Shown here in pieces: positions 1 through 19,021 of a stretch of DNA of 64,000 nucleotides. Each line of letters begins with the position of its first letter. The stretch's first letter is position 1. The stretch is from IMG/VR virus record IMGVR_UViG_3300025009_000050, positions 124,001 to 188,000 of that record. One strand, given 5' to 3'. The notes below the pieces were generated by a model. It did not search any database, was not told the origin of the DNA, and worked only from the letters and a program-made list of their open reading frames with translations. The translations under genes were made by a program, and so were the position numbers.

Positions 1-1730
1 TGTGTACTTCTAATAAATCTTCCCCACATGCAATTAGCTTGGCCTGGTACTCCCCATGTAAAATAGTTATCTACATATGGTTCTGCAGTTCCATTATTTA
101 TGGTAGAATTCTTCCAACCAATAATACTAGCCATACGAAATACTATTGTGCCTTGAGAATAACTAAGAATATTGGAGGGAAGATCTAATGAGCTTGAGTA
201 GCGTATAGATTTAGTGAATGATGTTGTGTATGGCTTCTGCTCTAACTGTACATCAGTTAGATAGTACTTTGCTCTATTTGCGTCAGCATAGAAATAAAAA
301 TACTCACTTCCACCAGTGGCACCAGTCGTAAATGTATAACTATGTTTAACCCACTTTCCAATCTCTGGAGTTAAATTATAATTTGTATCCCAAGGTCCAT
401 TAGGATCAAAAATAACAACCCCAGATACCCTATATATTAAGAATGATATAGTGTATGTTGTATTGGCTATAAGAGTAAGAGTATAATATCTATAATCAGT
501 TTGAATCCAAATTCCAACGTCTTGGTATAAACACGTTTTACCATCATTTAGAGTAGTTGTATAGATTGTTGCATTACCCTTTCCTCCAGAAAGATCCCAT
601 CCAGTTAATCCACTAGAAAAGTCTCCGTTATTAATTAGATTCGTAGTTGGCTCTTCTATTGAAATGCCGTCATTATTAATTGTCGTATTAATATTAGTAC
701 ATACATTAACATCTGCGATAGAATTCTGTAACCCATAACAATGCATAGATGTGTCTACATAGACTGGAAATGTTGCGAATACTAAACTTGTATAGAATAA
801 GATATCGTTTCTATAATATCTTACGGTTGTATTTTTAATCTCAATTTTGAATGTATCGGTATCGGCATTACATGTTCCAAAGCTTCCAATGTTTGTACCA
901 TTTTCAAATACGTAAAAAGAACCATTAGTATCTATCGCATAATCTATATCTGTATAAGAGAATGTAGTATGATTACTATTGAACCCAAGCATTTCTGCTC
1001 CAGTGACTCCGTCAACGTATTTAACTTTCCATTGTAATGAAACGTCACCACTGAACTTTTCAGATGAGATAGCCCCTGAATCCCAAGCACCTGTTCCTGC
1101 TGTTTTAGTTAAGCTGTTATCTGTTCCAACCGTAACACCAGTAGCGTTTTGCCATGTTACAGGATGCCATCCAGGATTTGCTGTAATACCTAAACTATTC
1201 ATATAGTGTGTCTTACCACGTGATGTTTCCTGATATTCTCCTTCTACGCTACTATCAAATATTGTATACCAAGTAACTCCATCCCCTGAGACCTCTGTCT
1301 TAGTATTATGGTATGTTCTACCATCATTATAATAATGCCATACTTTAATTAGATCAATATTAAATAGATCACCAAGATCAACCTGCACCCAGAATGGAGT
1401 TGTTGTGGTACCCCAGTATGGAGAGGTAGTAGTTACACCGTCTGTTAGTACTGTATTCCAAGTTGCATCAATTGACGTACCACCTTTACTTAATGCTACA
1501 TTTACTCCGTCATAGTCTATAGCCTGTATTTCTACCCAATGATTAGATGCATTAGAAGTACTTCCATTTAACCAGTCTCTGATGTATCTAATTTTGCTAG
1601 GTATGTACTTCTGTACTGTTCCATCTAGGGGATAATGAGCGACTAACCCGTTAATTATAACAGGCAATCTCTCATTAACCTCACCAGTTATCATTAGATT
1701 ACCATTCTTAAGTCTCCCCAATACTGTCAT
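1..1730 (-). CDS. Lectin-like tail-fibre partner / receptor-binding protein (discoidin-like + ConA/SPRY-like + CBM-like modules); partial, runs off the left edge
   Basis: Not in the ORF track because it has no stop inside the window. I translated about 1730-1320 and the motif-bearing stretches near 640, 200-260 and 1-60 by hand and saw no stop there; the rest was read less carefully. ATG at 1730 is preceded by AGGAGAGG overlapping the TAG of the upstream gene. N-terminus MTVLGRLKNGNLMITGEVNERLPVIINGLVAHYPLD is paralogous to 12136..15063 (RLPVITDGLVAHYPMD). Also contains RYIRDWLNG...HWVEIQA, WVQVDLG...EVSGDGVTW and IEEPTTNL...VQLEQKPYTTSF. Confidence 0.85.
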   Translation of the reverse strand, partial: MTVLGRLKNGNLMITGEVNERLPVIINGLVAHYPLDGTVQKYIPSKIRYIRDWLNGSTSNASNHWVEIQAIDYDGVNVALSKGGTSIDATWNTVLTDGVTTTSPYWGTTTTPFWVQVDLGDLFNIDLIKVWHYYNDGRTYHNTKTEVSGDGVTWYTIFDSSVEGEYQETSRGKTHYMNSLGITANPGWHPVTWQNATGVTVGTDNSLTKTAGTGAWDSGAISSEKFSGDVSLQWKVKYVDGVTGAEMLGFNSNHTTFSYTDIDYAIDTNGSFYVFENGTNIGSFGTCNADTDTFKIEIKNTTVRYYRNDILFYTSLVFATFPVYVDTSMHCYGLQNSIADVNVCTNINTTINNDGISIEEPTTNLINNGDFSSGLTGWDLSGGKGNATIYTTTLNDGKTCLYQDVGIWIQTDYRYYTLTLIANTTYTISFLIYRVSGVVIFDPNGPWDTNYNLTPEIGKWVKHSYTFTTGATGGSEYFYFYADANRAKYYLTDVQLEQKPYTTSFTKSIRYSSSLDLPSNILSYSQGTIVFRMASIIGWKNSTINNGTAEPYVDNYFTWGVPGQANCMWGRFIRST

Positions 1731-1741
1731 ATTATCCTCTC

Positions 1742-4700
1742 CTAAGCTGTATAAATGAAATCAAGACTATCTTCTGTCTCATTAAATTCTATTGAGAACT
1801 TTTGAGTTGACGAATCAGATGCTACTAAGCTTAGCTTATTTTTAATTTTAACTTCTCCATCATTTTCTAATGACATTAACTTATCCCCTATAGCATCGCC
1901 TCCATACATCCATACAAATGCAGAAGCACCTACACCAGTAGAATATTCTGTAGTTCCGTCAGTTCTAAATACCATTTGTCTTGAATTACCATATATCTTG
2001 AATGTAGCGTTGTCTCCATTTTCCCTCAGCCAAGAGTCATTAACTTTATAATTACCTTGTGCAAATACCTGAGACGAAAAGTTAGCTAGAGAGTAGTATC
2101 TTAAAAATGCATCATCAGATGCATATACTCTTGTTATAGTTGTTGTCCCTCTATCACCAGATATAATATTTATCCATCCAGCATTTATATAACCATTAGC
2201 GTCAGTTCTCACAATCTGGTTAGCTACGTTATTTGTCCCTGTAGCTATATGTAACCCGTCAACCATATCCGCATTTAAATTAGTACACATAGTTGTAGAT
2301 GTGATTGTAAGCGGAGCAGTTCCCGATGCTATATTTAGCGTTAGTCTAGAAAATGTAGGAGTTCCCGTAGTAGTAACACTTTGGTCTATATAACTATGGC
2401 TAGCTCCCGTATCAGAAACATGAGACAATGGTGCTGCATCTGTGATGCCATATCCTGATAGTGTAGTAGGATTTGTTCCTGCAGTAACCCTTCCTTTTTC
2501 ATCAACAGTAACAGACCTGTATGTAGAAGCTGCGACTCCTGAGGATGGTAAATCGGACGATTGGATAGCTCCGAATGCGTATGTTGTCGCTGCTGTAGCA
2601 CGAATAACGTGGCCTGCTGTCAAACCTGCTACAGGGTGATTAGTCATGTTAATGAGGCCATGTATTGTTGGAGCAATGCCAGCCTCACTAAGAGTATTGT
2701 TAATCCACGCTGTACCACTCCATTTTAATATCTCTCCTGTAGAGTTTGAAGTGATTGTTGTATTTGAAAGAGCATCTAATGTAGGCATCACATGAACATG
2801 GTCTGAGCGAGAAACTGTTGTAGCTGTGCCAGGTACTGAGGTACCAAGTGCTGTGGCTGAGGTACCAAAGCCTGTAATATCAGCCCAAGCATAATCACCA
2901 CCAGTGGCTGCTGAAGTATGAGTGTGTGCAGGAAGGTTGGCTGCTGTAATACCAGAAACACCACCTGTAGCAGTAAGTATTCCAGGTAAAGATAGGTTAC
3001 CACTTGAATCATATACCATTTCTTTTCTTGCTGCATACCCAGTTTGGATATTAGACATAAATCTAATTACGTAATCAGAAGTAAGCCATAATTCCTCCGT
3101 AGAATAAGGTAAGTTAGAACAAATAGTTGAAGCAGATTCACCAGAACCAATAATTAAGGCTGCTCCTGAGTCAATATAAGCACCTAAGCCATTTGAATCT
3201 GAACCATAAGCTGTTATTAAAGGTCTTGAATAAGAACCATATTTCAGATTAAAACTACCGCTTAAAGTCATTGAACCAGCTATAGTTGTATTACCAGTAG
3301 TTCCATCAACAAAGAGTTTTTGAGTTGTTTCTGCATCTGAGTAGATATAAAAACCTGCTCCATTCTTAAGCTTAACATTTCCTGATCCATCTATTGTAAA
3401 CATATCTAAAGACGTGTCTAAATCATGAATTGTTAATGCACTCGATGAACCTTTATTCTTAATAAATAGTCCGTTACCAGGACCTCTTGAGATTAAAGTC
3501 TGAGCCCATGAACCAGTATCATTATAAATGTCATATGTCCATTTCCCTCTATCTACTGTTATGATGTCTCTAGTATCAGTTATATTGCCTGCTGGAATTA
3601 CACCAGATGCTGGAACAGTTACAGTAGCGAGATCAGCATAGTCGCCTGTAGGTGCTGTCGTTGAGTTAACAACCGCTCCTGATGAGTTTACATAAATGTA
3701 TTGTGTGGTACTAGCAGTAAGTATTCTATTTGTTAGTAAAATGGCGTAACGAACGCCAGCTACATAAGCTGTCCCTGCAGCTATATCTACTGTAAGTGAG
3801 CTAAGACTTGGAGTGACAGCTAATCCTATATATATATAATTATCAAGAAATTCATTCCGTACTGTATTGATTTCAGTTTTAGTATAATATGAGGAATCAT
3901 GGTTATGGGTACACAACTGGGTCGTTCCATGTGCATGTACGTGATCAGAACGAGAAATTGTTGTAGCTGTGCCAGCAGCCGAAGTTCCTAACGCGGCTGC
4001 TGATGCACCGAATCCAGTTATTGAATTGGCTGCATGAGTAGTTAGCATTAATCCTGTCGTTGGATGTACATGATTAGCCAATGCAACAGCACTGCCAGAA
4101 CCATTAGACGCTGTTCCTAGAGCTTGGGAAGTTCCGCCTAAGGCTGTAATGTCTGCCCAAACATAGTCGCCACCAGTGGCTGCTGAAGTGTGGGTGTGTG
4201 CAGGTAAATTCGCTGCTGTTATTCCTAAGAAAGATGTAGCTGTTATTGTTCCTACAGTTGTAATATTACCCGCACTAGTGATTGTAACTTTATCTGCTGT
4301 AGAGTAAAACTTTAAATCAGTAGAACTAGGAGGATTGTATATTTTCCATTGATCTACACTAGCTGATTGAAATTTAATTCCTGATTCATTAGCTGCTGGT
4401 GCGTCAGCTAAAAAATATGAATTAGTAGCTGTTACACTTATCGTCTTGATATCAAGATCTGCATTTATAGACCCTTTAGTTTTTATGTTTCCTCTGGAAA
4501 AAATACCATTAGTCTGTTTATTAGTATCCCCATCAGCCCAAGCATCTGTAACACACAATTCCTTAACGTATAGGGCTTGTGCTGAACTTCCATTAGCTAT
4601 CTTTACAGTAACAGTACTCTGAAGCTGTCCTGCACCTGTGAATGTGGCTGGCAAGGATATGTAGTCAGCCATGGTTAATGGTTCACTTATATATGCAGTA

Positions 4701-5377
4701 CCATCAACGTACAGATTATGTGACACGGCATTCGTCATGTCACCTATCTTAAGCGATTGAGCAACGTAACAGTTATCATATATCTTTACCTTGCGTAGGT
4801 ATGCATCGGCACTTGGATTATGACCATATAAAATTAACCCTTGAACTCCTTCTGCGCCAGTAGTAGTTTCTATTGTCCCAGCATCTATATCTGAGAGTGT
4901 TGTTATAATCTTTACTGGTTTTATAGTCTCAGTACTATGATTATGACCTACATATGAAGCTTCAGTGCCATCAGACTTCTTAAATGAAGCTGCCCTAACT
5001 TCAGCCCAAGTAGGAGTAGTAAATGATCTATATATTTCCCATCTAAAATCAGTATTGTTCCATCTTATATATGGATTAGTTGTACTACCACCAATAAGCA
5101 TGCCGCCTGTAGCTGTACCACTATTTGATAGTATAAAAGTACTATTAGTAGTTCCAGTGTCTGTATTCTGAGCATGAGTGCTATGACCAATGGTATAGTT
5201 GCCACTCACTGTGAGTGTATAAGCACTACTAGCAGTTAGAGTAACATTACCAAGCTTAGTAGTCCCGCTGATTCCCCCTGTCCCTATAGTAACACCATTG
5301 TAAGTACCGCCTAACTTTACATCATTGTTATTTAAGTTTAAGTCACCAAACATTACGGTATATCCAAGATTGGCCAC
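1742..5377 (-). CDS. Tail fibre protein (1211 aa)
   Basis: GTG start overlaps the upstream TAG. Thr/Gly/Ser-rich, with HxH motifs (HTH, RSDHVH, HNH), a KVTVDEKGRVTAG-type fibre repeat (YRSVTVDEKGRVTAGTNPTTLSGYGITDA), LNADMVDGLH, and C-terminal FSIEFNETEDSLDFIYTA. Confidence 0.88.
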   Translation of the reverse strand: MANLGYTVMFGDLNLNNNDVKLGGTYNGVTIGTGGISGTTKLGNVTLTASSAYTLTVSGNYTIGHSTHAQNTDTGTTNSTFILSNSGTATGGMLIGGSTTNPYIRWNNTDFRWEIYRSFTTPTWAEVRAASFKKSDGTEASYVGHNHSTETIKPVKIITTLSDIDAGTIETTTGAEGVQGLILYGHNPSADAYLRKVKIYDNCYVAQSLKIGDMTNAVSHNLYVDGTAYISEPLTMADYISLPATFTGAGQLQSTVTVKIANGSSAQALYVKELCVTDAWADGDTNKQTNGIFSRGNIKTKGSINADLDIKTISVTATNSYFLADAPAANESGIKFQSASVDQWKIYNPPSSTDLKFYSTADKVTITSAGNITTVGTITATSFLGITAANLPAHTHTSAATGGDYVWADITALGGTSQALGTASNGSGSAVALANHVHPTTGLMLTTHAANSITGFGASAAALGTSAAGTATTISRSDHVHAHGTTQLCTHNHDSSYYTKTEINTVRNEFLDNYIYIGLAVTPSLSSLTVDIAAGTAYVAGVRYAILLTNRILTASTTQYIYVNSSGAVVNSTTAPTGDYADLATVTVPASGVIPAGNITDTRDIITVDRGKWTYDIYNDTGSWAQTLISRGPGNGLFIKNKGSSSALTIHDLDTSLDMFTIDGSGNVKLKNGAGFYIYSDAETTQKLFVDGTTGNTTIAGSMTLSGSFNLKYGSYSRPLITAYGSDSNGLGAYIDSGAALIIGSGESASTICSNLPYSTEELWLTSDYVIRFMSNIQTGYAARKEMVYDSSGNLSLPGILTATGGVSGITAANLPAHTHTSAATGGDYAWADITGFGTSATALGTSVPGTATTVSRSDHVHVMPTLDALSNTTITSNSTGEILKWSGTAWINNTLSEAGIAPTIHGLINMTNHPVAGLTAGHVIRATAATTYAFGAIQSSDLPSSGVAASTYRSVTVDEKGRVTAGTNPTTLSGYGITDAAPLSHVSDTGASHSYIDQSVTTTGTPTFSRLTLNIASGTAPLTITSTTMCTNLNADMVDGLHIATGTNNVANQIVRTDANGYINAGWINIISGDRGTTTITRVYASDDAFLRYYSLANFSSQVFAQGNYKVNDSWLRENGDNATFKIYGNSRQMVFRTDGTTEYSTGVGASAFVWMYGGDAIGDKLMSLENDGEVKIKNKLSLVASDSSTQKFSIEFNETEDSLDFIYTA

Positions 5378-8300
5378 TATATCACCTCACTAATTTGACC
5401 CTTGATTAAAACCCTACCATCACTAGTAAATTTCATTCGGTTAGTTGACCCACTAGTTAACTCATACATCGTGTTGATTTCTTCTGGTATCAGCTCTCTA
5501 TTATATAATCTAAAATCATACATCTTACCTTTAAAGAAATCAGTCGGCGTGCTTCCATCCCAGTCTTGTCCAATGGCTAATGGGTTAGGATATATTCTAT
5601 CATTAATCTTGACTGTTAAATCCTGTTGCTTGTCGAGCTGTCCATTAATATACATTGCACAATTCAATTGTGTAGCATTGATATTCTTAATAACAAAACA
5701 AACATAATACCACTGTCCCACTGTTAAAACAGTATTGCCATCGAGTGATGCTCCATCACAGTAAAAGCGTAACTTTTTTATATCCATCAGTATTTGTGGA
5801 TTAAAATCATTGTCTCCAATCGTGCAAATATGAAATGATCCACTTAATGCGTCATCCAGGTTAATCCATACACAAAATGATATTGTATCAAATTGTGGTT
5901 TATACCCTGTGTTTATCCATCCATTGGCACCATTAAATATAGAGCATTGCCCTTCCGGGCCAGATGTATATGTTATGTTATTTTCTGTCCCATGATTTAG
6001 ATTACCTGACCTATCCTTAGCATCCCCATTTAAAGGCCACCATCCGACTAGGCCATCTATAATGCCAACCTCACTGATATCAAGCATATTCATTGTTCCT
6101 GTTTCTTTTAAATTAATAGGCTCACCATCTGTGATATCCTGTATCTTAAAGTTAGTAACATATAGATCTGTGCCCAAACTTCCAGTGCTAGTATACTGGA
6201 ATCCCCAGCACAAATCCCTATAGCAGTTATAAGACGTTCCAGCTACAAAAACACTATAGGTGGTAGTGCATACCTTCCAGATGTCATCAGTTATATTAAA
6301 AGTAGCATATATCTCTTTCCTGCCTTGGAAGTTTGATGGCAGAGTACTGTATTTAGATGCAGATACACTAGTTAGTCCGCCACCACCCCAACCCATTTGA
6401 TTAGAAAAATACATTGCGCCAATACCATTAGAACTTTGCCCTTCTATTATGAATGATATTCTATATTTGCAGCCTTTCTGTAGTATATTAGGATCTATAT
6501 TAAACAAGTTTACCTTTAATCCACCCCATACGGTATTACCACAATCTGGATAGATTAAATTAGGTGGTCTATATATTCTATAACCTCTTGTAGTCAGACT
6601 AACTTGACAATTGGATTGTGTATATGAAGATAATCCATTAGTAAATAAACGATTGATAATTGCGTTATTTGTTTCTTGAGCTATGTTTTCTAATTCATGT
6701 ATCTTCCGAACAAATAGATTCCCCTTATCATCTAGGCTAGCACGTTGTTGATAAAGCTCTTTGATATCATCTGCTGAGAGAGCAGTAGCATATATACGGA
6801 CATCATCAACAATGCCGTTGAACTGATAATTCATGCCATTTGAAGAAGACCCGAATCTCATCGGTGCTACTGAACCGCTGTATGATGTTAAAGAATATTG
6901 CTTAATATACTCACCATTTATATAAACTTTAACAACTGCACCATCCCAACTTGCTGCTAAGTGGTACCAAGTACCTAGAGTCGCTGTAACTGGAGTTTGT
7001 CCTGCTGACCAACCTACTCCAGTTACAGCTCCTATAGTAGCGGTTAAATAATCATTCAGATCGACACCCAACCAGTATTCAGTACTTCCTATAGAATTGT
7101 CGGGGCCTTTGTGTAAGACACATTCGTAATTACTTCCTTCACCTATCTTATTGAACCAAGACGATATTGTTAGTGACGTAGTGCCAGGTACGAAGTTTTC
7201 TATGCCCATGTAGTTATTAGTTCCATTGAACTTATAACATCCGCTACCTATCTTGCTATCGGGTATCCATTGAGGACAGTTAGCATCTAGCATTGTGTGA
7301 TTATTATATCCACTAGAATCATATGCCTTACCGTCTCTTGTCCCTTCTGTGAAAGGAGTTGCATGATCTTTAATCTCTATCTGCAAGTTGACAAGTTTAA
7401 TTGTATCCCCGATTAGAGCGCTACATAGGTCGCTATGTATTATCCATCCTGATGTACTAAATGTTTGAGTATACTCAAAGTAACCGTCATCTCTAGTTAT
7501 CTTATTTAAAGTATTCGTATGGTATGTTGATATACAAGGTACAGTTGTTTTGAAAGGCACATCATTTAAATACAGATATCCGCTAATGGTGTATATAGTA
7601 CCTGTAGTAACTGCTGATGTGAATGTACTACACTGTAGTGCTACTGTTTGTGACGTTGATCCAGATTGTCTATAGCAGGTATGTGTATTCCCATCTCTAC
7701 TATAGGTATAATAGGGAGTATAAGCTGTGATAGTATATTGAGCGTAGTTAATGGTATACTCTTGAAAATCATCAAATGTCCAATGCCCTACTAGTGCTTT
7801 ACTTAGTTCTTTAATCTCTTTGTCTGATAATGCATGGTTGTATACCCGAACATCATCTAGTTTACATAGAGGTCTATAACTAGAGCTGTCTAGATACCCA
7901 GTCGACCATGCAAATAAAGCTATCTTGTCAGGAGCACATTTCATAGTATACGTAACTGTATGTTCTTTGATGCCATCCACCCACAAAGTTATCTGCTTAA
8001 TGTTATCATCGTATCTCATAACTAGATGAGACCATTTATTATATATGTTAGAAGTTCCATAATACTCATTGTATGTTCTACCTGTCCCACTTCCAGTATT
8101 ACATGAAATTCTAAAATCAGTTGATGATATCTGTCTAACTGTTATACCAGCACCATAGTTAGTATTGTGATTATGGTTGGTAACTAAACCATTTGCAGAA
8201 GCTTCAGTCACAGTTACGAACGCCCATGTAGCCATAGTGAAGCTACCAGTCAAGTCAATATTCTCCGTTGTTGCTAAGTACTCAGATGTCTTAACTGTTC

Positions 8301-8436: not shown

Positions 8437-8447
8437 CTAGGCACCTC

Positions 8448-10505: not shown

Positions 10506-10516
10506 TTATACACCAC

Positions 10517-12136
10517 CTAACCTAAGTCGTAGTCTAATGCAATAGTGTCTGTAGCAATTGGTGCGGCAACAAATGTTATCGTCGCACTACTCACAGTATA
10601 ATCAGTAGTTAATTTTTGTCTTAGTCCATTCTTATATACTCTAACACTACTTGAATTGAGTGAGTGACCAGATGCTAACGTAAAGGCAACTCTTGCCCCA
10701 TCAGGAGTGTGTCCAACTGCAAATGCGGCATCATAATAGTGTGTGTGTTTCTTAGTTCCTGCTTCATCCCAAGTCTCAACCTTACTATAAGTTATATCCT
10801 GAATAGTAAGTGTTTCAGTTGAATCATAAAAGCTAATCTTATCAGTGTCTATAGTCATACTCTTAGTGCTTCCGTTAGCAGCAGGTACGTCGTTCATTAC
10901 GATCTTAGTTTTATCCCCGTCTTTATAGATCTCCATTCTATTAAATGGATTATGAGATGTTGATGCGATGGTAGCATTAGACTTATCAGACTTGAATATG
11001 ATTACTTTCTTATTAACATTATCAGTGATTATAGGAACAAACTCACGAGCTTCTTTAATATATGCATCTAATATTACCGATACACCAGCAGGGATTGTAA
11101 CTTTAGCTAGCAATATAGCACCCTGACTAGCTACAGGAGACCACTTATTTAAGATTAACGCGTCTTCACTAGGATCGCTTATGACCGCAAGTCCACCAAT
11201 TGTATAGATACCTGCCTCATAATGTCCAGAGATAAATACATAATGTATATATCCAGCAGTAAATGGACTCTCTGGAGTTGTCTCTTGTGTGAAGTTCTTA
11301 TACCCATAATTCTTGATATATAATTTACCATTTGCTACAGTAACTGTTTTACTAGTTAACCCAGCAGTAACCTCGCATCCAGATATTACTCCATACCCGC
11401 CAGCATTAATACTACAATTAAATATATCTGATGCATGATAGCCATCAAGTAGATCTGCATTCAAGTAATCGACTACAGTAGTAGCACAACCAGAGTTTAT
11501 GTCTAATGGTTTGCCAGAAGTTGCGCTACATTTAAACTGTGTAGCCGTGATATATCTTCCGGCAAAGTCACCATTACCATCTCGAACTACTACCTTGCTA
11601 ACCGTATTAGCAGATGTTGCATCAACTGCCCAGGTAGTTGCCGCACTTCCATTAAAGTTATTACCAGTTAGATAACTACCACGAGTTAATGTGTTAGTTG
11701 TATTAGCAGTAATGGTTATGTTGGCAGAACCATCAAAGTTAGTACCGTTGATAGTTACAGTAGATGCTAACTTAGTGGCTGTTGATGCATTGCCTGTTAG
11801 CGGGCCAGTGAACCCTACTGCAGTTATATTGCCAGCAGTTGTGATAGTCACTCTATCAACTGTGCTATAGAACCTTAAGTCATCAGAACTAGCTGGATTG
11901 TATATTTTCCATTTATCAACACCAGCAGCTTGTAACCTAATTCCAGCTTCTTGTATAGCTGGAGCGTCAGCTAAGAAGTACGAATTAGTAGATGTTAAAC
12001 TTAATGTTTTAATATCCTTAGATACATTAAGTACTCCACCTATACTGAAGTCACCAGCTAATGAAGCACTAGTTAAACCTGAATGGAGAGCTAAATACCC
12101 TCCGATAGTGCAACCGCCTCTGAGCTGATCTCCCAT
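10517..12136 (-). CDS. Tail fibre / adaptor protein (539 aa)
   Basis: ATG overlaps the upstream TAA (TAATG). Contains fibre motifs TINGTNFDGSANITI and LNADLLDGYH, and a C-terminal beta-sandwich module VYKNGLRQKLTTDYTVSSATITFVAAP. Confidence 0.8.
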   Translation of the reverse strand: MGDQLRGGCTIGGYLALHSGLTSASLAGDFSIGGVLNVSKDIKTLSLTSTNSYFLADAPAIQEAGIRLQAAGVDKWKIYNPASSDDLRFYSTVDRVTITTAGNITAVGFTGPLTGNASTATKLASTVTINGTNFDGSANITITANTTNTLTRGSYLTGNNFNGSAATTWAVDATSANTVSKVVVRDGNGDFAGRYITATQFKCSATSGKPLDINSGCATTVVDYLNADLLDGYHASDIFNCSINAGGYGVISGCEVTAGLTSKTVTVANGKLYIKNYGYKNFTQETTPESPFTAGYIHYVFISGHYEAGIYTIGGLAVISDPSEDALILNKWSPVASQGAILLAKVTIPAGVSVILDAYIKEAREFVPIITDNVNKKVIIFKSDKSNATIASTSHNPFNRMEIYKDGDKTKIVMNDVPAANGSTKSMTIDTDKISFYDSTETLTIQDITYSKVETWDEAGTKKHTHYYDAAFAVGHTPDGARVAFTLASGHSLNSSSVRVYKNGLRQKLTTDYTVSSATITFVAAPIATDTIALDYDLG

Positions 12137-15063
12137 TAAGTGATCACCTGCCCTGTCATAATAGAACCTTGAACTTGCAGTTTAGACTTCTCATCCATTT
12201 TAGTTTGGTAAATAGCTTTTATCTCATCATCCGTTAACGCTCTAGGAACATAAATTAGATCTTTATAATATGAGTTTGGATACATTCCGCCAAAAGAGCC
12301 CATACCAAAAAAGCTACCATTCCATGATGTTATCCCACCATTGATAGTTATAACATTGCTTTTGGTTTCATCTTTGAAAACATGGAAGGAATTTATAGTT
12401 CCACTAGATCCGCTAAGAACAATAGCATGCATGTGCCATTTCATGCGATCAGCCTCACCTGTATATGGTGTCATTGCACCACCGCCATAAGTCCAACCAC
12501 TGTCTACGTTGTTCTTTACATATGCACAAATATTAGTACCAGAATTAGATGGTCCAAAATTCCATAAGGTGAAAGAAGCATTTGAATAGTAGTTGCCTAT
12601 CTCAAACATATTTGGGTAGGTGGTTTGAGTTGCATCATATGCACTATTTGGCTGAAGGCTTTTCCTCCAAAATAGAAATGTTGCATTATCAGATAAGGTC
12701 AATGGCCACTTAATACTTCCAGCACTTCTAGTCCCGTTGGCAAATGGAGTAGGAAATGAACGTTGTTCTAGTTGCATTTCTGTCACCAAACACTCTAATG
12801 CTCCATCACCAATAAAGCCAACCCCAGCACATAAAGTTGTACCAACAATTTGTCCTACAGTATAGCATAAATACCAACCATCAGATAATACTTGATATAC
12901 TAATGAACCGCCAGTTCCACCACCAAAATGAGCACGTATTCTTTCAGAAACTGTCCCGCCACTAAGCATTTTAATTTTAAAACTTAATGTATAGTAAGTA
13001 TTAGCTAGACAGGTTCTGCAGTCTCTAAATGAAGCATGAGTAGAAGGAGTTCCAGCTATCTTCGTTACCTTAGCTATCTTACTCCTGTTATATCTAGTAG
13101 TATACTCGGCCCAGGATAATGTTCCGTTAGCGTCAACAACATTAATATTAGTTAACTCACTTTGAGGAGAAGCATAAATATTGGTTGTCGCGTTTCCAAC
13201 CCATACTGATCCATCCTCATACACCGTATTAGCTTCAGTAGACGGACTTATTAACTTATACTTATCTTTACTATCGCAACCAAGTGAGAAGTATTTAGCA
13301 TCACTAGGGATCTCATTAGGTTCAGTAACTACTTGAGATGCAATCAGGTTACCAGTAGGAGTAAATTGGAAAGAAGGATTGACAAGTTCTTTTGCTTCTG
13401 ATTCAGATAGTGCTCTATTATAGATTGATAGATTTTTAAATATCGCGTTACTTCTGTTCCAACCCCATCCTAAATATATAATAGGGACATTCGAACTGTT
13501 AGCGGAACCTACTGTAGCAAGAGTTCCAAGCAGAACTCCATCTGCATAGAAAAATTGAGTAGTATTGTCCCAGCTAATTGCTATGTTAATCCACTTATTC
13601 TTTTGTGGAATATAAGCTGGAGACGATGTTACCGATAAACCTCCACTACCTTCATGCATGTAAAATTGACCATTACTATTCAAATATATGCCCCACCATT
13701 TACTGTTATATTGCGCATTAGATATTACGGTTTCACTAATGCCATCTCCTTCTAAATAGTAATCAAAGGCTATCGTAGAATTACTGGATAGTTGAGTCGA
13801 AATACCGAATGTCCCATCTCCTCTACTTCCATTAACATAAGAAGTTGAGAAAGCCTTGTTTTCTATCTGGACAGCCATAATATCAGCCTTTGTTACTCCA
13901 CTAGCGTACAAGTGTCTACCACCACTAGTACCAGTTGACGCTTTCGTTATATATACCCATTTGCCTAATGGAGTGTTTGATGAATTCATAGTTATCTTGT
14001 AAGATGGGTTATTGAGATCCCCCCATTCTATTTGTCCGTAGTGAAGTTTAATCCATATAGAATAAGATATACTTCCTGAAGTGTTTCCTATGTTGCCAGC
14101 AACCCAGCCACCCCAGCCACCACCATAGGTCTCGATTCCTTGCGCTTTTGTTAAGCCTGGGACTGGAGAATCATATACAGGGACAATTTCTACCTTATAG
14201 TTACCTATCCCAAAACGTTCACTCCAATTATTGCCAAAACCACAAACATTGCCAGTGTATCCAATGGCGTAAGACTCCATATTAGAAATTACAATTTGAT
14301 TTATAGTAGCCTCTTCTACTGCTATACCATCATATGTTAGAGTAGTATTGGAGTTAGTTATATTACCCTTACTCTTGCCGAGTGTATATAATATAGCTTC
14401 CTTATGAAATGAGAGTACATTGGAATCGCCCTCTTGGTCGAAGAACAACACTGCTCCACTAAATGACTCATAGATATAGCCGGTTATTTGATTAGTATCA
14501 GATCTACGATAAAATGGAATAGCCCCATTCTGTAATTGATCGATCCCACCATATAGATCAGCGATACCAGCAGATGGATACATTAGACTGTCTGTATATA
14601 TTGGAATATTGGGTTCTATCAATATATCATGGGTAGCATGGGCTGTTGCAGTATATGTTTTAACAAACACATTAGTCCTTGTATCATTACCCTGGGCTAT
14701 CACAGAAACACCAGCATCAACGAACTGTTTTAACTTGTCCATTATATTACTAGAGAAACCCCAGACATAATAGTCACAGATTATCAAATCATACTGAAGT
14801 GCTGTCGCGACATCAACAGTTGTTAAGTCAGTAGAATTAGTGATAGTTGCTCCTTGTGATATAAGCCAATTATACCAATAGTGTGTGCTCTGATAATGGC
14901 CCAACACTTTAATCCCAGCCAGCGATCTAATTTTGTTGAGGGTTTCATCCATAGGATAGTGTGCAACTAGCCCGTCTGTTATAACGGGCAGTCGTGTGTT
15001 TATATCCCCAGATATGCGAAGGTCGCCATCTTTAGTAAGTTCCCCAGCTATGAATTCAGACAT
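12136..15063 (-). CDS. Lectin-like tail-fibre partner protein (LamG-like and CBM-like modules plus a GATase-like alpha/beta insert; 975 aa)
   Basis: RLPVITDGLVAHYPMD start, two EEATTN...Q(I/L)E...(S/P)F..G.R cassettes, and LamG-type WINIAISWD...FKNLSIYNRALS. Confidence 0.82.
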   Translation of the reverse strand: MSEFIAGELTKDGDLRISGDINTRLPVITDGLVAHYPMDETLNKIRSLAGIKVLGHYQSTHYWYNWLISQGATITNSTDLTTVDVATALQYDLIICDYYVWGFSSNIMDKLKQFVDAGVSVIAQGNDTRTNVFVKTYTATAHATHDILIEPNIPIYTDSLMYPSAGIADLYGGIDQLQNGAIPFYRRSDTNQITGYIYESFSGAVLFFDQEGDSNVLSFHKEAILYTLGKSKGNITNSNTTLTYDGIAVEEATINQIVISNMESYAIGYTGNVCGFGNNWSERFGIGNYKVEIVPVYDSPVPGLTKAQGIETYGGGWGGWVAGNIGNTSGSISYSIWIKLHYGQIEWGDLNNPSYKITMNSSNTPLGKWVYITKASTGTSGGRHLYASGVTKADIMAVQIENKAFSTSYVNGSRGDGTFGISTQLSSNSTIAFDYYLEGDGISETVISNAQYNSKWWGIYLNSNGQFYMHEGSGGLSVTSSPAYIPQKNKWINIAISWDNTTQFFYADGVLLGTLATVGSANSSNVPIIYLGWGWNRSNAIFKNLSIYNRALSESEAKELVNPSFQFTPTGNLIASQVVTEPNEIPSDAKYFSLGCDSKDKYKLISPSTEANTVYEDGSVWVGNATTNIYASPQSELTNINVVDANGTLSWAEYTTRYNRSKIAKVTKIAGTPSTHASFRDCRTCLANTYYTLSFKIKMLSGGTVSERIRAHFGGGTGGSLVYQVLSDGWYLCYTVGQIVGTTLCAGVGFIGDGALECLVTEMQLEQRSFPTPFANGTRSAGSIKWPLTLSDNATFLFWRKSLQPNSAYDATQTTYPNMFEIGNYYSNASFTLWNFGPSNSGTNICAYVKNNVDSGWTYGGGAMTPYTGEADRMKWHMHAIVLSGSSGTINSFHVFKDETKSNVITINGGITSWNGSFFGMGSFGGMYPNSYYKDLIYVPRALTDDEIKAIYQTKMDEKSKLQVQGSIMTGQVIT

Positions 15064-15073
15064 ATGAATCCTC

Positions 15074-18000
15074 CTATGTTACGAATACAAACTTAAGTGA
15101 CTGAGTAGTTGCATCCTGTTTAATATCCCAGTTACCAGCCTTATGAACTGTTGCAGTTACTGTGCCAGTTGCTGTTACGCTAGCAGCCGATACTCCATTA
15201 GTAATGGCTGCTGATGAAGCAGTTACAGATGTGGTAGAAGTCACAGCATTAAATGTTACACCGTCAGTTGTCTTAACATTCTGGTCCATCAAGTATACTT
15301 CTGTTGCACCTTGACCAGTGTTAATCGTTTCTATATTCACTAAGTTCCTTGAAGCGTCGATAACAACAGTTGCATTAACTTGGTATCCGTATGGCGCATC
15401 AACACCAGCGTCATCATAAATTCTGAAATGAATTCTGTCATTATCTTCTGGTTCATAAAAATCCAATCCTTCTGGAGTAGCCTTTATAGACATGTCAATG
15501 CCAGTATCAGAGGAACCATTAAAATGAATTACAGGTGTAGTTGAAGCTAATGTTAGTGGCCCGGTTAGTGTTTGACCAGCAAAGGTTGGGGAGCTAGTTG
15601 TCTTAACGTTCTGGTCCATTAAATATAATTCTGTAGCGCCTTGTCCTGTGTCAATAGTTCCACCAACTTTAAGGTTACCTTTGAAGTAACCATGACCACC
15701 AGATAGATTTATATAAGAAGCTAGCGAGTTACCACCAATGAAAGCGATTGAATTAGAAAGTAATGTTTCGTTTCCAGCAACGACTAAGTTACTATCAATC
15801 TGTCTGTGATATATTCCATACTGACCATTTACGCCATCACAGAATATCCAGCCATCCTCTGCGCCCCCTCTAGACACTATAGAAGCGTCGTTCCATGCAC
15901 TAGGAGTATGGCTATACCATGTAGTCTGAGCTACAGGAATATAATTATTGTGATTAGTCGGTAGATCAGAAGCAGTTAGGTCCGCACCAGCAGTTACTAA
16001 GCCTTTAGAATCATAAGTAATCTTACACTTGGTTGCGCCTGTAATAGCAGTGTTTGCAGCCACCTTGGTGGCCAGTCCATCATATACAGCATCACATGAT
16101 GGAGAAGAATTTTGTTCTCCATCAGTTATTGTGCTAGAGATATATGCTAACTGTTTCGGAGTTCCCCAAGTGGTATCTGCTTGCGCTGCCTGGTAATGTC
16201 TAATTTTCATTTCAGACTTATCAAATATTAGAGCGTTAACATTGCCTCCTGATGCATCTATATAGCTATTAAGCACCAACATGTCTTGATAATCTTGGTT
16301 CTCAGTGCCTGTCATACCGCCTAGAGAAGTAAAAACTAATTCTAAGTACCCTTTGGAGGTATTAACTGGTTTTCTATCTCTGTCATCTATATTCTGTAGA
16401 TTGCTATGATAGTGAGTAGATGGAGTAAATGAGCTGGGCTTGCTAGTTAGCTCTCCCCAATCAACATTCCCCCATGCCATAACACCAGCAGTTGAACCTG
16501 CTTTTAAAACCTTTAGATTATTGGTCGTACTAGTTGCTGGGACATGTAAATTACCATCATTTGTTGGGTGAGTATAATTATTTGCACTAGTAGCAATACC
16601 AGACAGCTTCGTACGTTCTGTATCTGTAAAGAATCTATGAGTAGCATCCTCTGTAATAATGCTTGCTGGGTGATTTGCTGGGTGTGTGTATACAGTATCA
16701 GTGAACACAGCACCAGTAGGCACAGCAGTTAATACAGTCAGACTATTTACTGTATCAGCATTGGTAGCTGCGTTAACTTTAATACCTTGAATAGTTGTTG
16801 CACTGTATGTCCATTTACCATTAGCTAAATCATAAGCTGACTTAACAGCAACAGCTGTTGCAGCCAATGTTGTAGAATCACTATCAATTGCACTACTTAA
16901 TTGAACTATACCAGATGCAGTAGTACTAGCAGAAGGAATACTACTAAGTCTAGCCCAAGGAATTATACCAGCAGTAACTGTGCCAGTAGTGTCTACGGTA
17001 AATTTAGCAGATGTATTATCCCATATATTAAAACTACCTTTAACTATAATGTTATCTGTAGTAGCATCGTCACCTAATGTAGTATTACCATTAACTATCA
17101 TGTTACCTTGAACTGTGAAATCACCCTGAACATCACTTTCTTGACTATTCTGTGAAGATGAGAGAAGTACTGACATTGACTTCCCATACATGTTCCCACG
17201 ATTATCAATACTGAAATAAGTGTATGAATCGTCATTCTTATTGATTCTTAATAGAATAACTGTTTGATAAAAACTTACATATACAGTAGCTCCATTTGAT
17301 ATAGAGCTATCAGTATGTCTCTTAATCTTACCAGCATAATAATCTATATCATAATCTATACCTCTAGTATATTGTGTCCCTGTTTTCCCGGATGCTGACC
17401 ATACTTCTTCAGTCATTGCGTCAATCGGATTGTACCCAATGTTACTGAATACATCTCCAATAACAACCGCTATACTATTACGTGCAGTATAAGTGTCTGT
17501 GGTAGGCTTGATCTTGATTGATTCACTGTTTGCAGTAAAGACATTACTACTAGATAGGGTAGGAAATGTATTATGGTCTGAATCATTGTGGGTGTAGGTC
17601 ACTGTCTTGCCTGATATAGATGCTTGAATATCACCACTAGCTGCGAAAGTTAATGTATCATCATTAATATTTGCAGAAGAAGTAGTTCCTCCTACGGTAA
17701 CATTTTTAAAGATATACTGACTAGAACCCTTATCCGAGTTGACTAAACCATTAGCATCGGCAGTAAGACCAGGACTAGTTCCAAGTTTAACACTAAACTC
17801 GGTTGTTAATAATTGTAATCCATTGCTAGCAGTATATGTAGTATTAGTAGAAGATATGGTTATCGTACTACTAGATCTGGATATGGTAGTCGCTCCGCTA
17901 CTCTTAATATCTACGATAGCTCCAGATGTAATACTCACTCCAGTATCAGTATTTGCCTTCAATAGCCAACTTTGATAGTTATCGTATGGGTGGGTATGTG

Positions 18001-19021
18001 TAGGTGCTTTACTATCTAATGCAGTTTGGAGCCCATCTACGTTACTAATAATATGGTTATGACTATCATCTACTACAGTCACAATACCAGTAGCGTCTAT
18101 AGTTATATCTCCACCAGTTTTGATATGACCAAGCGAAACATTAGCAATAACGGTTGGGTGGGTATCTGGAGTATATGGATGTGTATGTGCATCAGACTTT
18201 GCATTCCAAGTACTTATCAAGGTATCCGTTACAAATCTATTACTAGCATCTTGCGTAATAATACTTGGCGAATGGTTAGCTGGATGAGTATAACTGTAAG
18301 TATTAGCTATAGTTATTGCACTAGCAGATCGTGTTATACTGATATTGGAACCATTCTTAAAATCAACTATTGATCCAGTAGTAACATTCTGTCCAGTGCC
18401 TTCTGTGTTTTGCTTTAATATCCAGTTTTGATAATTATCATAAGGGTGGGTGTGCGCATCTGCTTTCGCATTCCATGTAACCTTCTCCGTGTCTGCAACA
18501 AATCTATGAGTAGTATCTTCAGTAATCATAGTAGCTGCGTGAGAAGATGGATGTGTATAAGTATTGGCAATAGTCATAGCTGTTCCGGTTCTTGTAATGC
18601 TAATATTAGAACCATTTTTAAAATCAACTATCGTTCCGGTAATAACATCAGCACCAGTTTCTTCTGTGTTTTGTTTGAGAATCCACTTGACGTAGTTATC
18701 ATACGTTGGTTTGTCAGTAATATTATTCCAGTGGACAGAGGCTTGACCATTAGTTTGAAGATTCGTCTTAGTGTAGTATTGACTTAAATCAACTCCAGTG
18801 ATAGTACCACTAACAGTAAGGTCACCGCTGATAGTAACGTTACCGCTTACTGTTCCACCGGCAGATGCAAACTTATCGTTAATAGCTGATACAATGTCGG
18901 AGACGTTACCAGCCGCTAACGTGCCAGATACAGTTAAGTTACTTGCAAAGGTGGAAGCCTGACTCACGGTCAGACCCCCATTAATCCTTGTGTTATAATC
19001 TATATCTCTATATACAGCCAT
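15074..19021 (-). CDS. Long tail fibre protein with internal repeats (1315 aa)
   Basis: Phage tail-fibre repeat ASTTASGIVQLSSAIDSDSTTLAATAVAVKSAYD (Phage_fiber_2-like), three YDNY..W.LK.NT repeats, KITYDSKGLVTAG, and C-terminal WDIKQDATTQSLKFVFVT. Confidence 0.88.
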   Translation of the reverse strand: MAVYRDIDYNTRINGGLTVSQASTFASNLTVSGTLAAGNVSDIVSAINDKFASAGGTVSGNVTISGDLTVSGTITGVDLSQYYTKTNLQTNGQASVHWNNITDKPTYDNYVKWILKQNTEETGADVITGTIVDFKNGSNISITRTGTAMTIANTYTHPSSHAATMITEDTTHRFVADTEKVTWNAKADAHTHPYDNYQNWILKQNTEGTGQNVTTGSIVDFKNGSNISITRSASAITIANTYSYTHPANHSPSIITQDASNRFVTDTLISTWNAKSDAHTHPYTPDTHPTVIANVSLGHIKTGGDITIDATGIVTVVDDSHNHIISNVDGLQTALDSKAPTHTHPYDNYQSWLLKANTDTGVSITSGAIVDIKSSGATTISRSSSTITISSTNTTYTASNGLQLLTTEFSVKLGTSPGLTADANGLVNSDKGSSQYIFKNVTVGGTTSSANINDDTLTFAASGDIQASISGKTVTYTHNDSDHNTFPTLSSSNVFTANSESIKIKPTTDTYTARNSIAVVIGDVFSNIGYNPIDAMTEEVWSASGKTGTQYTRGIDYDIDYYAGKIKRHTDSSISNGATVYVSFYQTVILLRINKNDDSYTYFSIDNRGNMYGKSMSVLLSSSQNSQESDVQGDFTVQGNMIVNGNTTLGDDATTDNIIVKGSFNIWDNTSAKFTVDTTGTVTAGIIPWARLSSIPSASTTASGIVQLSSAIDSDSTTLAATAVAVKSAYDLANGKWTYSATTIQGIKVNAATNADTVNSLTVLTAVPTGAVFTDTVYTHPANHPASIITEDATHRFFTDTERTKLSGIATSANNYTHPTNDGNLHVPATSTTNNLKVLKAGSTAGVMAWGNVDWGELTSKPSSFTPSTHYHSNLQNIDDRDRKPVNTSKGYLELVFTSLGGMTGTENQDYQDMLVLNSYIDASGGNVNALIFDKSEMKIRHYQAAQADTTWGTPKQLAYISSTITDGEQNSSPSCDAVYDGLATKVAANTAITGATKCKITYDSKGLVTAGADLTASDLPTNHNNYIPVAQTTWYSHTPSAWNDASIVSRGGAEDGWIFCDGVNGQYGIYHRQIDSNLVVAGNETLLSNSIAFIGGNSLASYINLSGGHGYFKGNLKVGGTIDTGQGATELYLMDQNVKTTSSPTFAGQTLTGPLTLASTTPVIHFNGSSDTGIDMSIKATPEGLDFYEPEDNDRIHFRIYDDAGVDAPYGYQVNATVVIDASRNLVNIETINTGQGATEVYLMDQNVKTTDGVTFNAVTSTTSVTASSAAITNGVSAASVTATGTVTATVHKAGNWDIKQDATTQSLKFVFVT
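17830..18770 (-). repeat. Three dispersed YDNY..W.LK.NT...IVD.K...I.R repeats with THP..H linkers
   Basis: YDNYVKWILKQNTEETG, YDNYQNWILKQNTEGTG, YDNYQSWLLKANTDTG. Confidence 0.88.

What the first reader, a model, noticed from the sequence alone, without database searches (positions are those of the whole stretch)
1..19021. Three tandem fibre + lectin-partner gene pairs with a conserved C-terminal docking-like motif
Seen: three otherwise divergent fibres end with the same short motif: WDIKQDATTQSLKFVFVT (15074-15135), FEMMYNPTTNSLDFNFVG (8448-8505) and FSIEFNETEDSLDFIYTA (1742-1800). Each is immediately followed by a gene beginning with an LVA(H/W)Y(P/K)(L/M)(D/N) lectin module (12136..15063, 5377..8436, 1..1730). 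Inference: a modular fibre-plus-adhesin system analogous to T-even gp37/gp38, triplicated to give at least three receptor specificities, with the terminal motif as the adhesin-binding site.
Basis: partly seen in the sequence, partly recalled or inferred. Interest (0 to 1): 0.62.

Follow-up and report, generated by a model that had tools for sequence, protein, structure and literature searches.

The report
Tail-fibre end tag pairs with lectin genes
Three tail-fibre genes of a 244-kb Bacillus-type jumbo phage end in the same ~17-residue tag and are each followed by a large lectin-domain (LamG) gene; the same tag-plus-lectin pairing recurs in dozens of unrelated phages, so it is most likely a portable joint that plugs lectin-type host-recognition proteins onto fibre ends.

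Summary
In the whole 244,052-bp genome the motif occurs only three times, always as the last 18 residues of a fibre protein. Each tagged gene is followed after 10-11 nt by a gene with an LVA(H/W)Y start; the fibre's stop codon lies inside the next gene's ribosome-binding site.

The pairing is conserved elsewhere:
- KVP40-like Vibrio phages have it.
- Metagenomic contigs and an SPbeta-like context have it.
- Of 35 IMG/VR loci with the tag at an exact C-terminus, 29 have a LamG domain starting just downstream, against 2 of 49 control windows.

Only the junction is conserved; the rest of both proteins differs between lineages. A predicted complex of fibre 2 tip and LamG 2 gave weak support (0.43 against 0.14 for the best control). 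Published particle proteomics of a Vibrio phage detects a protein matching the LamG orthologue by size and gene order.

So docking is well supported, and the gp37/gp38 analogy holds only as a working principle. The partners are unrelated to gp38 and about 1,000 aa long. Two of the three are followed by another fibre gene whose start overlaps their stop, so they may be connectors rather than end adhesins. I found no description of this tag in the literature.

The parts
15074..19021 (-). Fibre 1 (1315 aa) with a Phage_fiber_2 repeat and HxH-type repeats; carries the tag at its C-terminus
15077..15130 (-). Tag 1: WDIKQDATTQSLKFVFVT (variant with SLKF)
   Evidence: the same variant in L092 (HWTIEEDAVTGSLKFIYS) precedes a homologous partner N-terminus
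12136..15063 (-). LamG partner 1 (975 aa): class A N-terminal module (residues 1-40, hairpin-INTRLP-GLVAHYPMD), ThuA-like domain about 42-235, Laminin_G_3 at 426-556
10517..12136 (-).
8448..10505 (-). Fibre 2 (685 aa) with SDHxH repeats and a C-terminal module that is internal in the fibres of Xanthomonas phage RTH11 and Alteromonas AD45 phages
8451..8504 (-). Tag 2: FEMMYNPTTNSLDFNFVG (fits the consensus YNxTxxS[LI]DFxF)
5377..8436 (-). LamG partner 2 (1019 aa), class B: the LamG domain starts at residue 1-3; three Laminin_G_3 domains (window 7762-8436, 6748-7335, 5467-6051)
1742..5377 (-). Fibre 3 (1211 aa); N-terminus VANLGYTVMFGDLNL resembles that of the gene after the LamG gene in KVP40-like phages; its start overlaps the stop of LamG 2 (TAGTG)
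1745..1798 (-). Tag 3: FSIEFNETEDSLDFIYTA
1..1730 (-). LamG partner 3, 5' part (full gene 1088 aa, continues 1,536 nt beyond the window start): class A N-terminal module, discoidin domain 46-175, Laminin_G_3 at 566-671; last gene of the cluster
19034..31402 (-). Giant 4122-aa protein directly upstream of fibre 1, joined by the same stop/ribosome-binding-site overlap (TAGGAGG); probably part of the same appendage

Best explanation
The last ~17 residues of each fibre form a portable C-terminal docking tag. The consensus from many phages is x-[MLI]-x-Y-N-x-T-x-x-S-[LI]-D-F-x-F-x-stop, which looks like a beta-hairpin. The N-terminus of the protein encoded immediately downstream binds this tag. That partner N-terminus comes in two forms. 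In class B (LamG 2) a LamG/ConA-like jelly-roll domain starts at residue 1-3. In class A (LamG 1 and LamG 3) there is a ~45-residue module: hairpin, [ED/NT]RLP, then GLVAHYPLD. Translation is coupled, because the fibre's stop codon lies inside the partner's ribosome-binding site. The result is a fibre rod carrying a large multi-domain carbohydrate-binding-type protein at its distal end. This phage has three such joints with three different partners (ThuA-like plus LamG; three LamG domains; discoidin plus LamG). Shown here: the motif, the gene linkage and its conservation, and the LamG fold. Inferred: physical docking, presence in this phage's virion, and glycan or host binding.
For: - Uniqueness: the motif and the LVAxY start each occur only at these three junctions in the 244-kb genome.
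- Coupling: the stop codon sits in the ribosome-binding site.
- KVP40-like Vibrio phages ValKK3, F86 and D480 have a tail fibre ending ...YNSTSESIDFIFS*, followed after 11 nt by MSLIAWYPL..., which is 50% identical to LamG 2 residues 1-225.
- Metagenomic fibres ending in the tag are followed by class A or class B partners.
- Reverse test: IMG/VR loci with close N-terminal LamG relatives have a tagged ORF 9-17 nt upstream.
- Forward test: 43 pattern hits gave 35 with the tag at an exact C-terminus. Of these, 29 have a LamG domain beginning within 1.3 kb downstream, one more has a class A partner and two are truncated. Controls gave 2 of 49 (Fisher p = 2e-14, redundancy not removed).
- Fibres that share fibre 2's module but end in an S74 chaperone have no LamG gene nearby.
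- An alignment of 19 tagged fibre ends is conserved only in the last ~17 residues.
- Predicted complex of three fibre 2 C-termini with LamG 2 residues 1-225: ipSAE 0.43 against 0.14 for the best of three controls, runs agree in at least 86% of contacts, partner pLDDT at least 88, verdict 'weak support'. The mark was reached by 58 of 80 solved complexes and 2 of 110 mismatched pairs, but scores of 0.60 or under came from only 7 of those 80.
- Particle mass spectrometry of Schizotequatrovirus 6E351A lists a 59-kDa tail fibre protein and the adjacent 122-kDa 'virion structural protein' at similar counts (PMC12028318 Table S4). These match the 58.0-kDa tagged fibre and 121.7-kDa LamG protein of sister phage D480.
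- LamG 2 residues 1-225 fold as a ConA-like jelly roll (pLDDT 84.6).
Against: - No direct binding data exist, and the complex score is only a weak pass, obtained with my own alignments in a 3:1 set-up unlike the tool's calibration.
- No interface was returned, so which residues touch is unknown.
- The class A N-terminal module was modelled at low confidence.
- Exceptions exist. L059, L062 and L088 carry the tag without a detected LamG gene just downstream. P0093 is a class A-like protein with no fibre gene upstream.
- Many sampled loci are related to each other, so the counts overstate independence.
- The proteomic link rests on size and gene order, not on sequence identity to 6E351A.
Confidence: 0.7

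Rival explanations
1. Connector model, a refinement rather than a denial of docking. The LamG proteins are nodes, not end-pieces. Their N-terminus takes the tagged fibre and their conserved C-terminus (hairpin plus [IVF]-x-E-[VI]) takes the N-terminus of the next fibre. The cluster giant, fibre 1, LamG 1, the 539-aa fibre, fibre 2, LamG 2, fibre 3, LamG 3 would then build one or two long, serially linked or branched appendages. Only LamG 3 would be terminal.
For: - The stops of LamG 1 and LamG 2 overlap the starts of the next fibre genes (TAATG, TAGTG).
- In many other loci the gene after the partner begins MA[KNQ]LGxTxx[FN]GxLxV (after class B) or MADxLRGGSTxGG (after class A). Fibre 3 and the 539-aa fibre follow this rule.
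- Partner C-termini share a hairpin plus xE[VI] ending across lineages.
- LamG 3 lacks this ending and is followed by a 213-nt gap and a different kind of gene.
Against: - Gene order alone is weak evidence, and cassettes can simply be stacked.
- In several loci the next gene is a small non-fibre protein.
- In this phage the E-V and Q-V-I-T codons also form the next gene's ribosome-binding site (GAGGTGAT, AGGTGATC), which could explain part of the C-terminal conservation here.
Confidence: 0.35
2. Assembly-chaperone or transient-cap model. The downstream protein recognises the tag only to fold or trimerise the fibre, as T4 gp38 and Tfa proteins do, and is not kept in the virion.
For: - The tagged fibres lack an S74 intramolecular chaperone, and no Tfa gene was found.
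- Untagged relatives of fibre 2's module do end in S74 domains, so something else must help the tagged fibres fold.
- Tight translational coupling would fit a chaperone.
Against: - The partners are 975-1088 aa with several lectin or carbohydrate-binding-type domains, which is unlike known fibre chaperones.
- The Vibrio-phage orthologue, matched by size and synteny, is found in purified particles at counts similar to the tagged fibre.
Confidence: 0.08
3. No contact. The tag is simply the terminal strand of a common fibre-end fold, and the LamG gene travels with it by shared descent of a cassette.
For: - Many sampled loci are related large phages.
- The tag looks like a generic beta-hairpin, and similar W-x-I...L-x-F hairpins occur inside fibres.
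Against: - The regions upstream of the tag and downstream of the partner N-terminus are unrelated between lineages, while the junction is kept.
- The pairing spans T4-like vibriophages, Bacillus-type jumbo phages, a YomF_N (SPbeta-like) context and phages that appear to recode a stop codon.
- The complex prediction beats its controls.
Confidence: 0.12

Closest known systems
T-even gp37 / gp38 adhesin (T2, T6, S16 type)
   Same: A receptor-binding protein is encoded directly downstream of the distal fibre gene and attaches to the fibre's C-terminal tip. The junction is conserved while the binding parts are mosaic.
   Different: The partners are not gp38 homologues (no Pfam or PHROG hit). They are about four times larger and built of LamG, discoidin and ThuA-like domains. 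The fibre tips are not gp37-like. Stoichiometry is unknown. Two partners are followed by further fibre genes.
T4 long-tail-fibre serial joints (gp34-gp35-gp36-gp37)
   Same: Consecutive genes encode consecutive fibre segments joined end to end. From memory, the tagged protein of KVP40-like phages has a gp36-like N-terminus (MAELRSTTAIGGKLVWHGGN).
   Different: Here one side of the joint is a globular lectin-fold protein instead of another trimeric rod. The tag sequence has no counterpart that I know of in T4 gp36.
Branched receptor-binding systems with conserved anchor modules (CBA120 TSP1-4, G7C gp63.1/gp66, DT57C LtfA/LtfB, phiKp24)
   Same: Several different receptor-binding proteins in one virion are plugged together through short conserved docking modules, with the specificity domains exchanged by recombination.
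   Different: In those systems the docking modules are N-terminal domains of tailspikes or fibres. Here the conserved element is a ~17-residue C-terminal tag, and the docked protein is LamG-based. No sequence relation was found.
Laminin_G_3 (PF13385) ConA-like lectin domains
   Same: LamG 2 has three domains above the Pfam threshold (E = 1.7e-56), and the other two partners have one each. The predicted fold is a ConA-like jelly roll.
   Different: The family is generic. Most members, including LamG repeats in giant-virus proteins found by the same profile, have no tagged fibre upstream.

Membership tests
T-even gp38 adhesin system | The partner protein belongs to the gp38 adhesin family | tested here: not met
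   Pfam and PHROG scans of all three partners return only Laminin_G_3, F5_F8_type_C, Sialidase N-terminal and Pentaxin-type hits, with no gp38 family. Sequence searches of two partners against the PDB found no gp38.
T-even gp38 adhesin system | The adhesin gene lies immediately downstream of the distal fibre gene | tested here: met
   Gaps of 10-11 nt with a stop/ribosome-binding-site overlap at all three pairs.
T-even gp38 adhesin system | The adhesin binds the C-terminal tip of the trimeric fibre | tested here: inconclusive
   Predicted complex ipSAE 0.43 against 0.14 for the best control, verdict 'weak support', no interface given.
Laminin_G_3 / ConA-like lectin superfamily | Profile match above the curated threshold | tested here: met
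   LamG 2: 191 bits, three stretches. LamG 1: 44.1 bits. LamG 3: 40.3 bits. The cut-off is 27.6 bits.
Laminin_G_3 / ConA-like lectin superfamily | Jelly-roll beta-sandwich fold | tested here: met
   AlphaFold2 model of LamG 2 residues 1-225 has pLDDT 84.6 and pTM 0.86. Foldseek top hits are lectin-like jelly-roll subdomains (E about 1e-10, TM 0.55-0.65, 10-19% identity). This is fold likeness only.
Laminin_G_3 / ConA-like lectin superfamily | Carbohydrate or other ligand binding | not testable with these tools
Tail-fibre chaperones (Tfa / Caudo_TAP; intramolecular Peptidase_S74) | A chaperone domain at the fibre C-terminus or in the downstream gene | tested here: not met
   No S74 or TAP hit in any window fibre or partner. 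S74 is present in untagged relatives of fibre 2's module.
Tag-plus-LamG junction cassette (defined here) | C-terminal YNxTxxS[LI]DFxF-type tag within 0-6 residues of the stop, followed by a gene with a class A or class B N-terminus | tested here: met
   Fibre 2 fits the consensus exactly. Fibres 1 and 3 are variants, each with matching relatives elsewhere (L092 for fibre 1).

The most novel reading that the evidence does not exclude
Tailed phages of very different lineages share a two-sided set of connectors. One is a C-terminal fibre tag that plugs into the N-terminus of a LamG-type protein. The other is a C-terminal hairpin-xE[VI] tag on that protein, which takes the MA.LG.T / MAD.LRGG N-terminus of the next fibre. 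Together they would allow rods and lectin nodes to be chained or branched at will. In this jumbo phage, about 11,000 residues of fibre proteins would then form one or two long, multi-lectin appendages.
Probability: 0.3. Interest if true: 0.75.

Novelty: new variant of a known kind. Interest (0 to 1): 0.58.

Why it matters
Host range of phages is set by modular receptor-binding proteins, and knowing the joints is what makes them predictable and exchangeable. A short sequence tag that reliably marks 'a LamG-type protein docks here' would have three uses:
- It would improve annotation of the many 'hypothetical' or 'virion structural' proteins next to fibre genes. These include the recombination hotspot at 195-205 kb in broad-host-range Schizotequatroviruses (PMC12028318), which by position appears to include this cassette.
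- It would explain how large phages carry several binding specificities.
- It would give a defined, testable interface for structural work on fibre assembly.

Tried and rejected
- Megablast of window 1-19021 against the phage collection found no match. tblastn of LamG 1 also found none.
- Read-through or frameshift fusion of fibre and partner was rejected. The partner start is 13-14 nt from the first base of the fibre's stop codon, so it is out of frame, and each partner has its own strong ribosome-binding site.
- A first, tight regular expression for internal copies of the tag found none. Looser hairpins of similar flavour do occur inside fibres (WKIYNPASSDDLRFY in the 539-aa fibre and fibre 3), so the tag is a specialised form of a common fibre hairpin.
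- The single-sequence locus search with LamG 2 residues 1-225 found only one distant standalone LamG gene with no fibre upstream. The alignment-based search was needed.
- The AlphaFold2 model of LamG 3 residues 1-360 was poor (mean pLDDT 47). Only the discoidin domain was confident, so it says nothing about the class A module.
- PDB sequence searches with fibre 2, LamG 1 and the tag alignment gave nothing or chance-level hits.
- Covariation between tag variants and partner N-terminus variants (SLKF with INTRLP, in the window and in L092) was considered. I dropped it as evidence because the two pairs are homologous and L042 breaks the pattern.
- Literature searches found no description of the tag or of a LamG-fibre pairing.
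- Cognate against non-cognate complex predictions could not be run because only one job was allowed.
- The reads tools were not used. No alternative genetic code was named; in-frame stops in related loci were read as X.
Full report
**Context.** The window is bases 124001-188000 of a single 244,052-bp contig. All large genes lie on the - strand and GC content is about 38%. Baseplate-type genes lie at 43-47 kb. A baseplate-region protein has its best relatives (32-34% identity over 95% of its length) in the Bacillus jumbo myophages Edson, vB_BceM_WH1 and KLEB27-3, and more distantly in 0305phi8-36. Ribosome-binding sites are of the strong GGAGG type. This is therefore a jumbo myovirus of the 0305phi8-36-like lineage, probably infecting a Bacillota host. 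No close DNA relative is in the phage collection.

**Gene map of the finding.** In transcription order on the - strand:
- a giant 4122-aa protein (19034-31402)
- fibre 1 (15074-19021, 1315 aa)
- LamG 1 (12136-15063, 975 aa)
- an untagged 539-aa fibre (10517-12136)
- fibre 2 (8448-10505, 685 aa)
- LamG 2 (5377-8436, 1019 aa)
- fibre 3 (1742-5377, 1211 aa)
- LamG 3 (from 1730, running off the window; 1088 aa in full)

The three fibres end in WDIKQDATTQSLKFVFVT, FEMMYNPTTNSLDFNFVG and FSIEFNETEDSLDFIYTA. In all six-frame ORFs of the whole genome the motif occurs only there, always two residues before the stop. The LVAxY(P/K)(L/M)(D/N) start occurs only in the three downstream genes. The fibre stop codon is part of the next gene's ribosome-binding site (acaTAGGAGGattcatATG, ggaTAGGAGGtgcctagGTG, gctTAGGAGaggataatATG). 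The reading frames differ, so this is coupled translation of two proteins, not read-through. Upstream of the last ~17 residues the three fibre ends hardly align.

**The pairing is conserved elsewhere.** LamG 2 residues 1-225 are 50% identical to the N-terminus of a 'virion structural protein' of KVP40-like Vibrio phages. In ValKK3, F86 and D480 that gene starts MSLIAWYPL.... It lies 11 nt after a 'tail fiber protein' that ends ...ASIVYNSTSESIDFIFS...ATIEYNSTSKSIDFIFA or ...ASIEYNSTTNSIDFIFA.

A word search with the end of fibre 2 found many metagenomic fibres ending in the same tag. Those looked up are followed by partner genes:
- L006 and L007 are followed by class A partners (M..RL..x.x.I.GEVNERLP....GL.AHYPLD).
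- L008 is followed by a class B partner (MSIIAWYPLDGN).
- L090, in a YomF_N context, and L092 are further class A examples. L092 repeats the SLKF variant of fibre 1 together with an INTRLP partner like LamG 1.
- One class A-like protein (P0093, on a 558-kb contig) has no fibre gene upstream.

**Association tests.**
- Reverse direction: profiles of the two partner N-terminus classes were used to fetch IMG/VR loci. Wherever a close relative has the domain at the protein's N-terminus, the upstream ORF ends in the tag with a gap of 9-17 nt. Distant internal LamG repeats, for example in giant-virus proteins, do not show this.
- Forward direction: a DNA pattern for YNxTxxS[LI]DFxF gave 43 loci. Eight are chance hits, with 14-54 residues still to the stop. 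In the other 35 the tag lies 0-2 residues from the stop.
- Of these 35, 29 have a class B LamG domain within 1.3 kb downstream, mostly from profile position 1. One more has a class A partner, two are cut by the contig end, and three show none.
- Control windows from the same loci gave 2 of 49 hits, both inside multi-LamG partners. Fisher p = 2e-14, with redundancy not removed; about 30 of the loci are distinct.
- Fibres that share fibre 2's module but end in an S74 chaperone (Xanthomonas phage RTH11, Alteromonas phage AD45-P1) have no LamG gene within 8 kb.
- Several other loci also carry two tagged fibres (L024, L030, L074), so multiple cassettes per genome are not unique to this phage.

**Only the junction is conserved.** In an alignment of 19 tagged fibre ends, the invariant or near-invariant positions are the Y, N, F and F of the tag. 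The preceding 100 residues belong to several unrelated modules. Partner proteins likewise differ after their first domain. This is the signature of a selected interface in a mosaic system.

**What the partners are.**
- LamG 2 has three Laminin_G_3 domains (E = 1.7e-56). Its first domain models confidently (pLDDT 84.6) as a ConA-like jelly roll. The Foldseek hits are to lectin-like jelly-roll subdomains of various proteins at 10-19% identity. This is shared fold only, and nothing toxin-like is present.
- LamG 1 has the class A module, a ThuA-like alpha/beta domain (Atlas structural TM 0.69) and one LamG domain.
- LamG 3 has the class A module, a discoidin domain and one LamG domain.
- In class A the LVAHYPLD strand is part of a ~45-residue N-terminal module that is widespread in metagenomic proteins. 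It is not the start of an adjacent LamG domain.

**Does it dock?** A complex of three copies of the fibre 2 end (120 aa) with LamG 2 residues 1-225 scored ipSAE 0.43, against 0.14 for the best of three controls. The runs agreed in at least 86% of contacts and the partner's pLDDT was at least 88. The tool's verdict was 'weak support'. The mark was reached by 58 of 80 solved complexes and 2 of 110 mismatched pairs, but scores of 0.60 or under came from only 7 of those 80. No interface was returned. Given the strong prior from comparative genomics, I take this as modest positive evidence.

Published particle proteomics of Schizotequatrovirus 6E351A lists a 59-kDa tail fibre protein (49 and 77 counts in the two replicates) and the adjacent 122-kDa virion structural protein (52 and 52) (PMC12028318 Table S4). 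In sister phage D480 the tagged fibre is 58.0 kDa and the LamG protein 121.7 kDa, in the same gene order. The orthologue is therefore very probably a virion component, which argues against a purely chaperone role.

**A further layer.**
- The stops of LamG 1 and LamG 2 overlap the starts of the next fibre genes (TAATG, TAGTG).
- Across loci, the gene after the partner often starts MA[KNQ]LGxTxx[FN]GxLxV (after class B; fibre 3 is VANLGYTVMFGDLNL and ValKK3 ORF348 is MAKLGPTNIFGALNV). After class A it often starts MADxLRGGSTxGG (the 539-aa fibre is MGDQLRGGCTIGG).
- Partner C-termini share a hairpin plus xE[VI] ending.
- LamG 3 lacks that ending and closes the cluster.
- The LamG proteins may therefore be connectors in a serial or branched appendage rather than simple end adhesins.
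- This rests on gene order and terminal motifs only. In this phage the terminal codons also serve as the next gene's ribosome-binding site.

**Comparison and novelty.** The working principle resembles T2/S16 gp37-gp38 and the T4 fibre joints, but membership in those families fails. No gp38, Tfa or S74 family was detected, and no solved relative was found by sequence. Literature searches found no description of the tag or of a LamG-fibre pairing. I rate it a new variant of a known kind, namely modular receptor-binding-protein attachment, with a well-defined and widely distributed sequence signature.

**Limits.** There is no binding experiment, no interface and no cognate-against-non-cognate test. 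The sampled loci are partly related to each other. The stoichiometry, the ligands and the overall architecture of the appendage remain inferred.

Noticed in passing
window 10517-12136 (-): An untagged 539-aa fibre gene sits between pair 1 and pair 2. Its residues about 40-110 are homologous to residues about 300-380 of fibre 3 (TNSYFLADAPA...WKIYNP...DL[RK]FYST). Its N-terminus MGDQLRGGCTIGG matches the N-termini of genes that follow class A partners in other phages.
   Followed up: partly
L010-12, L018, L022, L025, L046, L048, L057, L060, L067, L080, L082, L083 (TAG only); L027, L049, L053, L055, L061, L071 (TGA only): In many related IMG/VR loci the LamG gene that follows a tagged fibre is interrupted by in-frame stops of one kind only, TAG or TGA. 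This suggests phages that recode a stop codon and also carry the cassette. The stops were read as X and no alternative code was assumed.
   Followed up: partly
window 19034-31402 (-): A 4122-aa ORF lies directly upstream of fibre 1, joined by the same TAGGAGG stop/ribosome-binding-site overlap. It has only weak Pfam hints (beta-propeller lactonase-like at 2748-2815, pentapeptide repeat). It is probably a giant appendage protein of the kind seen in the 0305phi8-36 lineage.
   Followed up: partly
window 39748-41031 (-): A 427-aa radical SAM domain protein (phrog_1802, E = 8e-40) is embedded among the baseplate and fibre structural genes.
   Followed up: no
window 5377-5400 and 12136-12160 (-): The last codons of LamG 2 (S-E-V-I = AGT GAG GTG ATA) and of LamG 1 (Q-V-I-T = CAG GTG ATC ACT) also form the Bacillus-type ribosome-binding site (GAGGTGAT, AGGTGATC) of the overlapping next gene. 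The same bases therefore carry both a protein motif and a translation signal.
   Followed up: partly
genome 118939-122250, just outside the window (L089): After a 213-nt gap, two paralogous genes (710 and 388 aa) follow LamG 3. They have similar N-termini (LSYWDGLKYVNPTVKTRDSSGNWV and IKYYDGAFHKEAPVKIRDIAGNWV) and similar C-termini, and their function is unknown.
   Followed up: no
L024, L030 and L074: Other large phage contigs also carry two tagged fibres, each with its own downstream partner, so repeated cassettes within one genome recur.
   Followed up: partly
L003 (ValKK3), L004 (F86), L093 (D480): The tag-plus-LamG cassette of Schizotequatroviruses lies at about 199-204 kb in D480. By position this falls in the 195-205 kb recombination hotspot reported for 6E351A in PMC12028318. 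That paper does not discuss the LamG protein as a receptor-binding candidate.
   Followed up: partly
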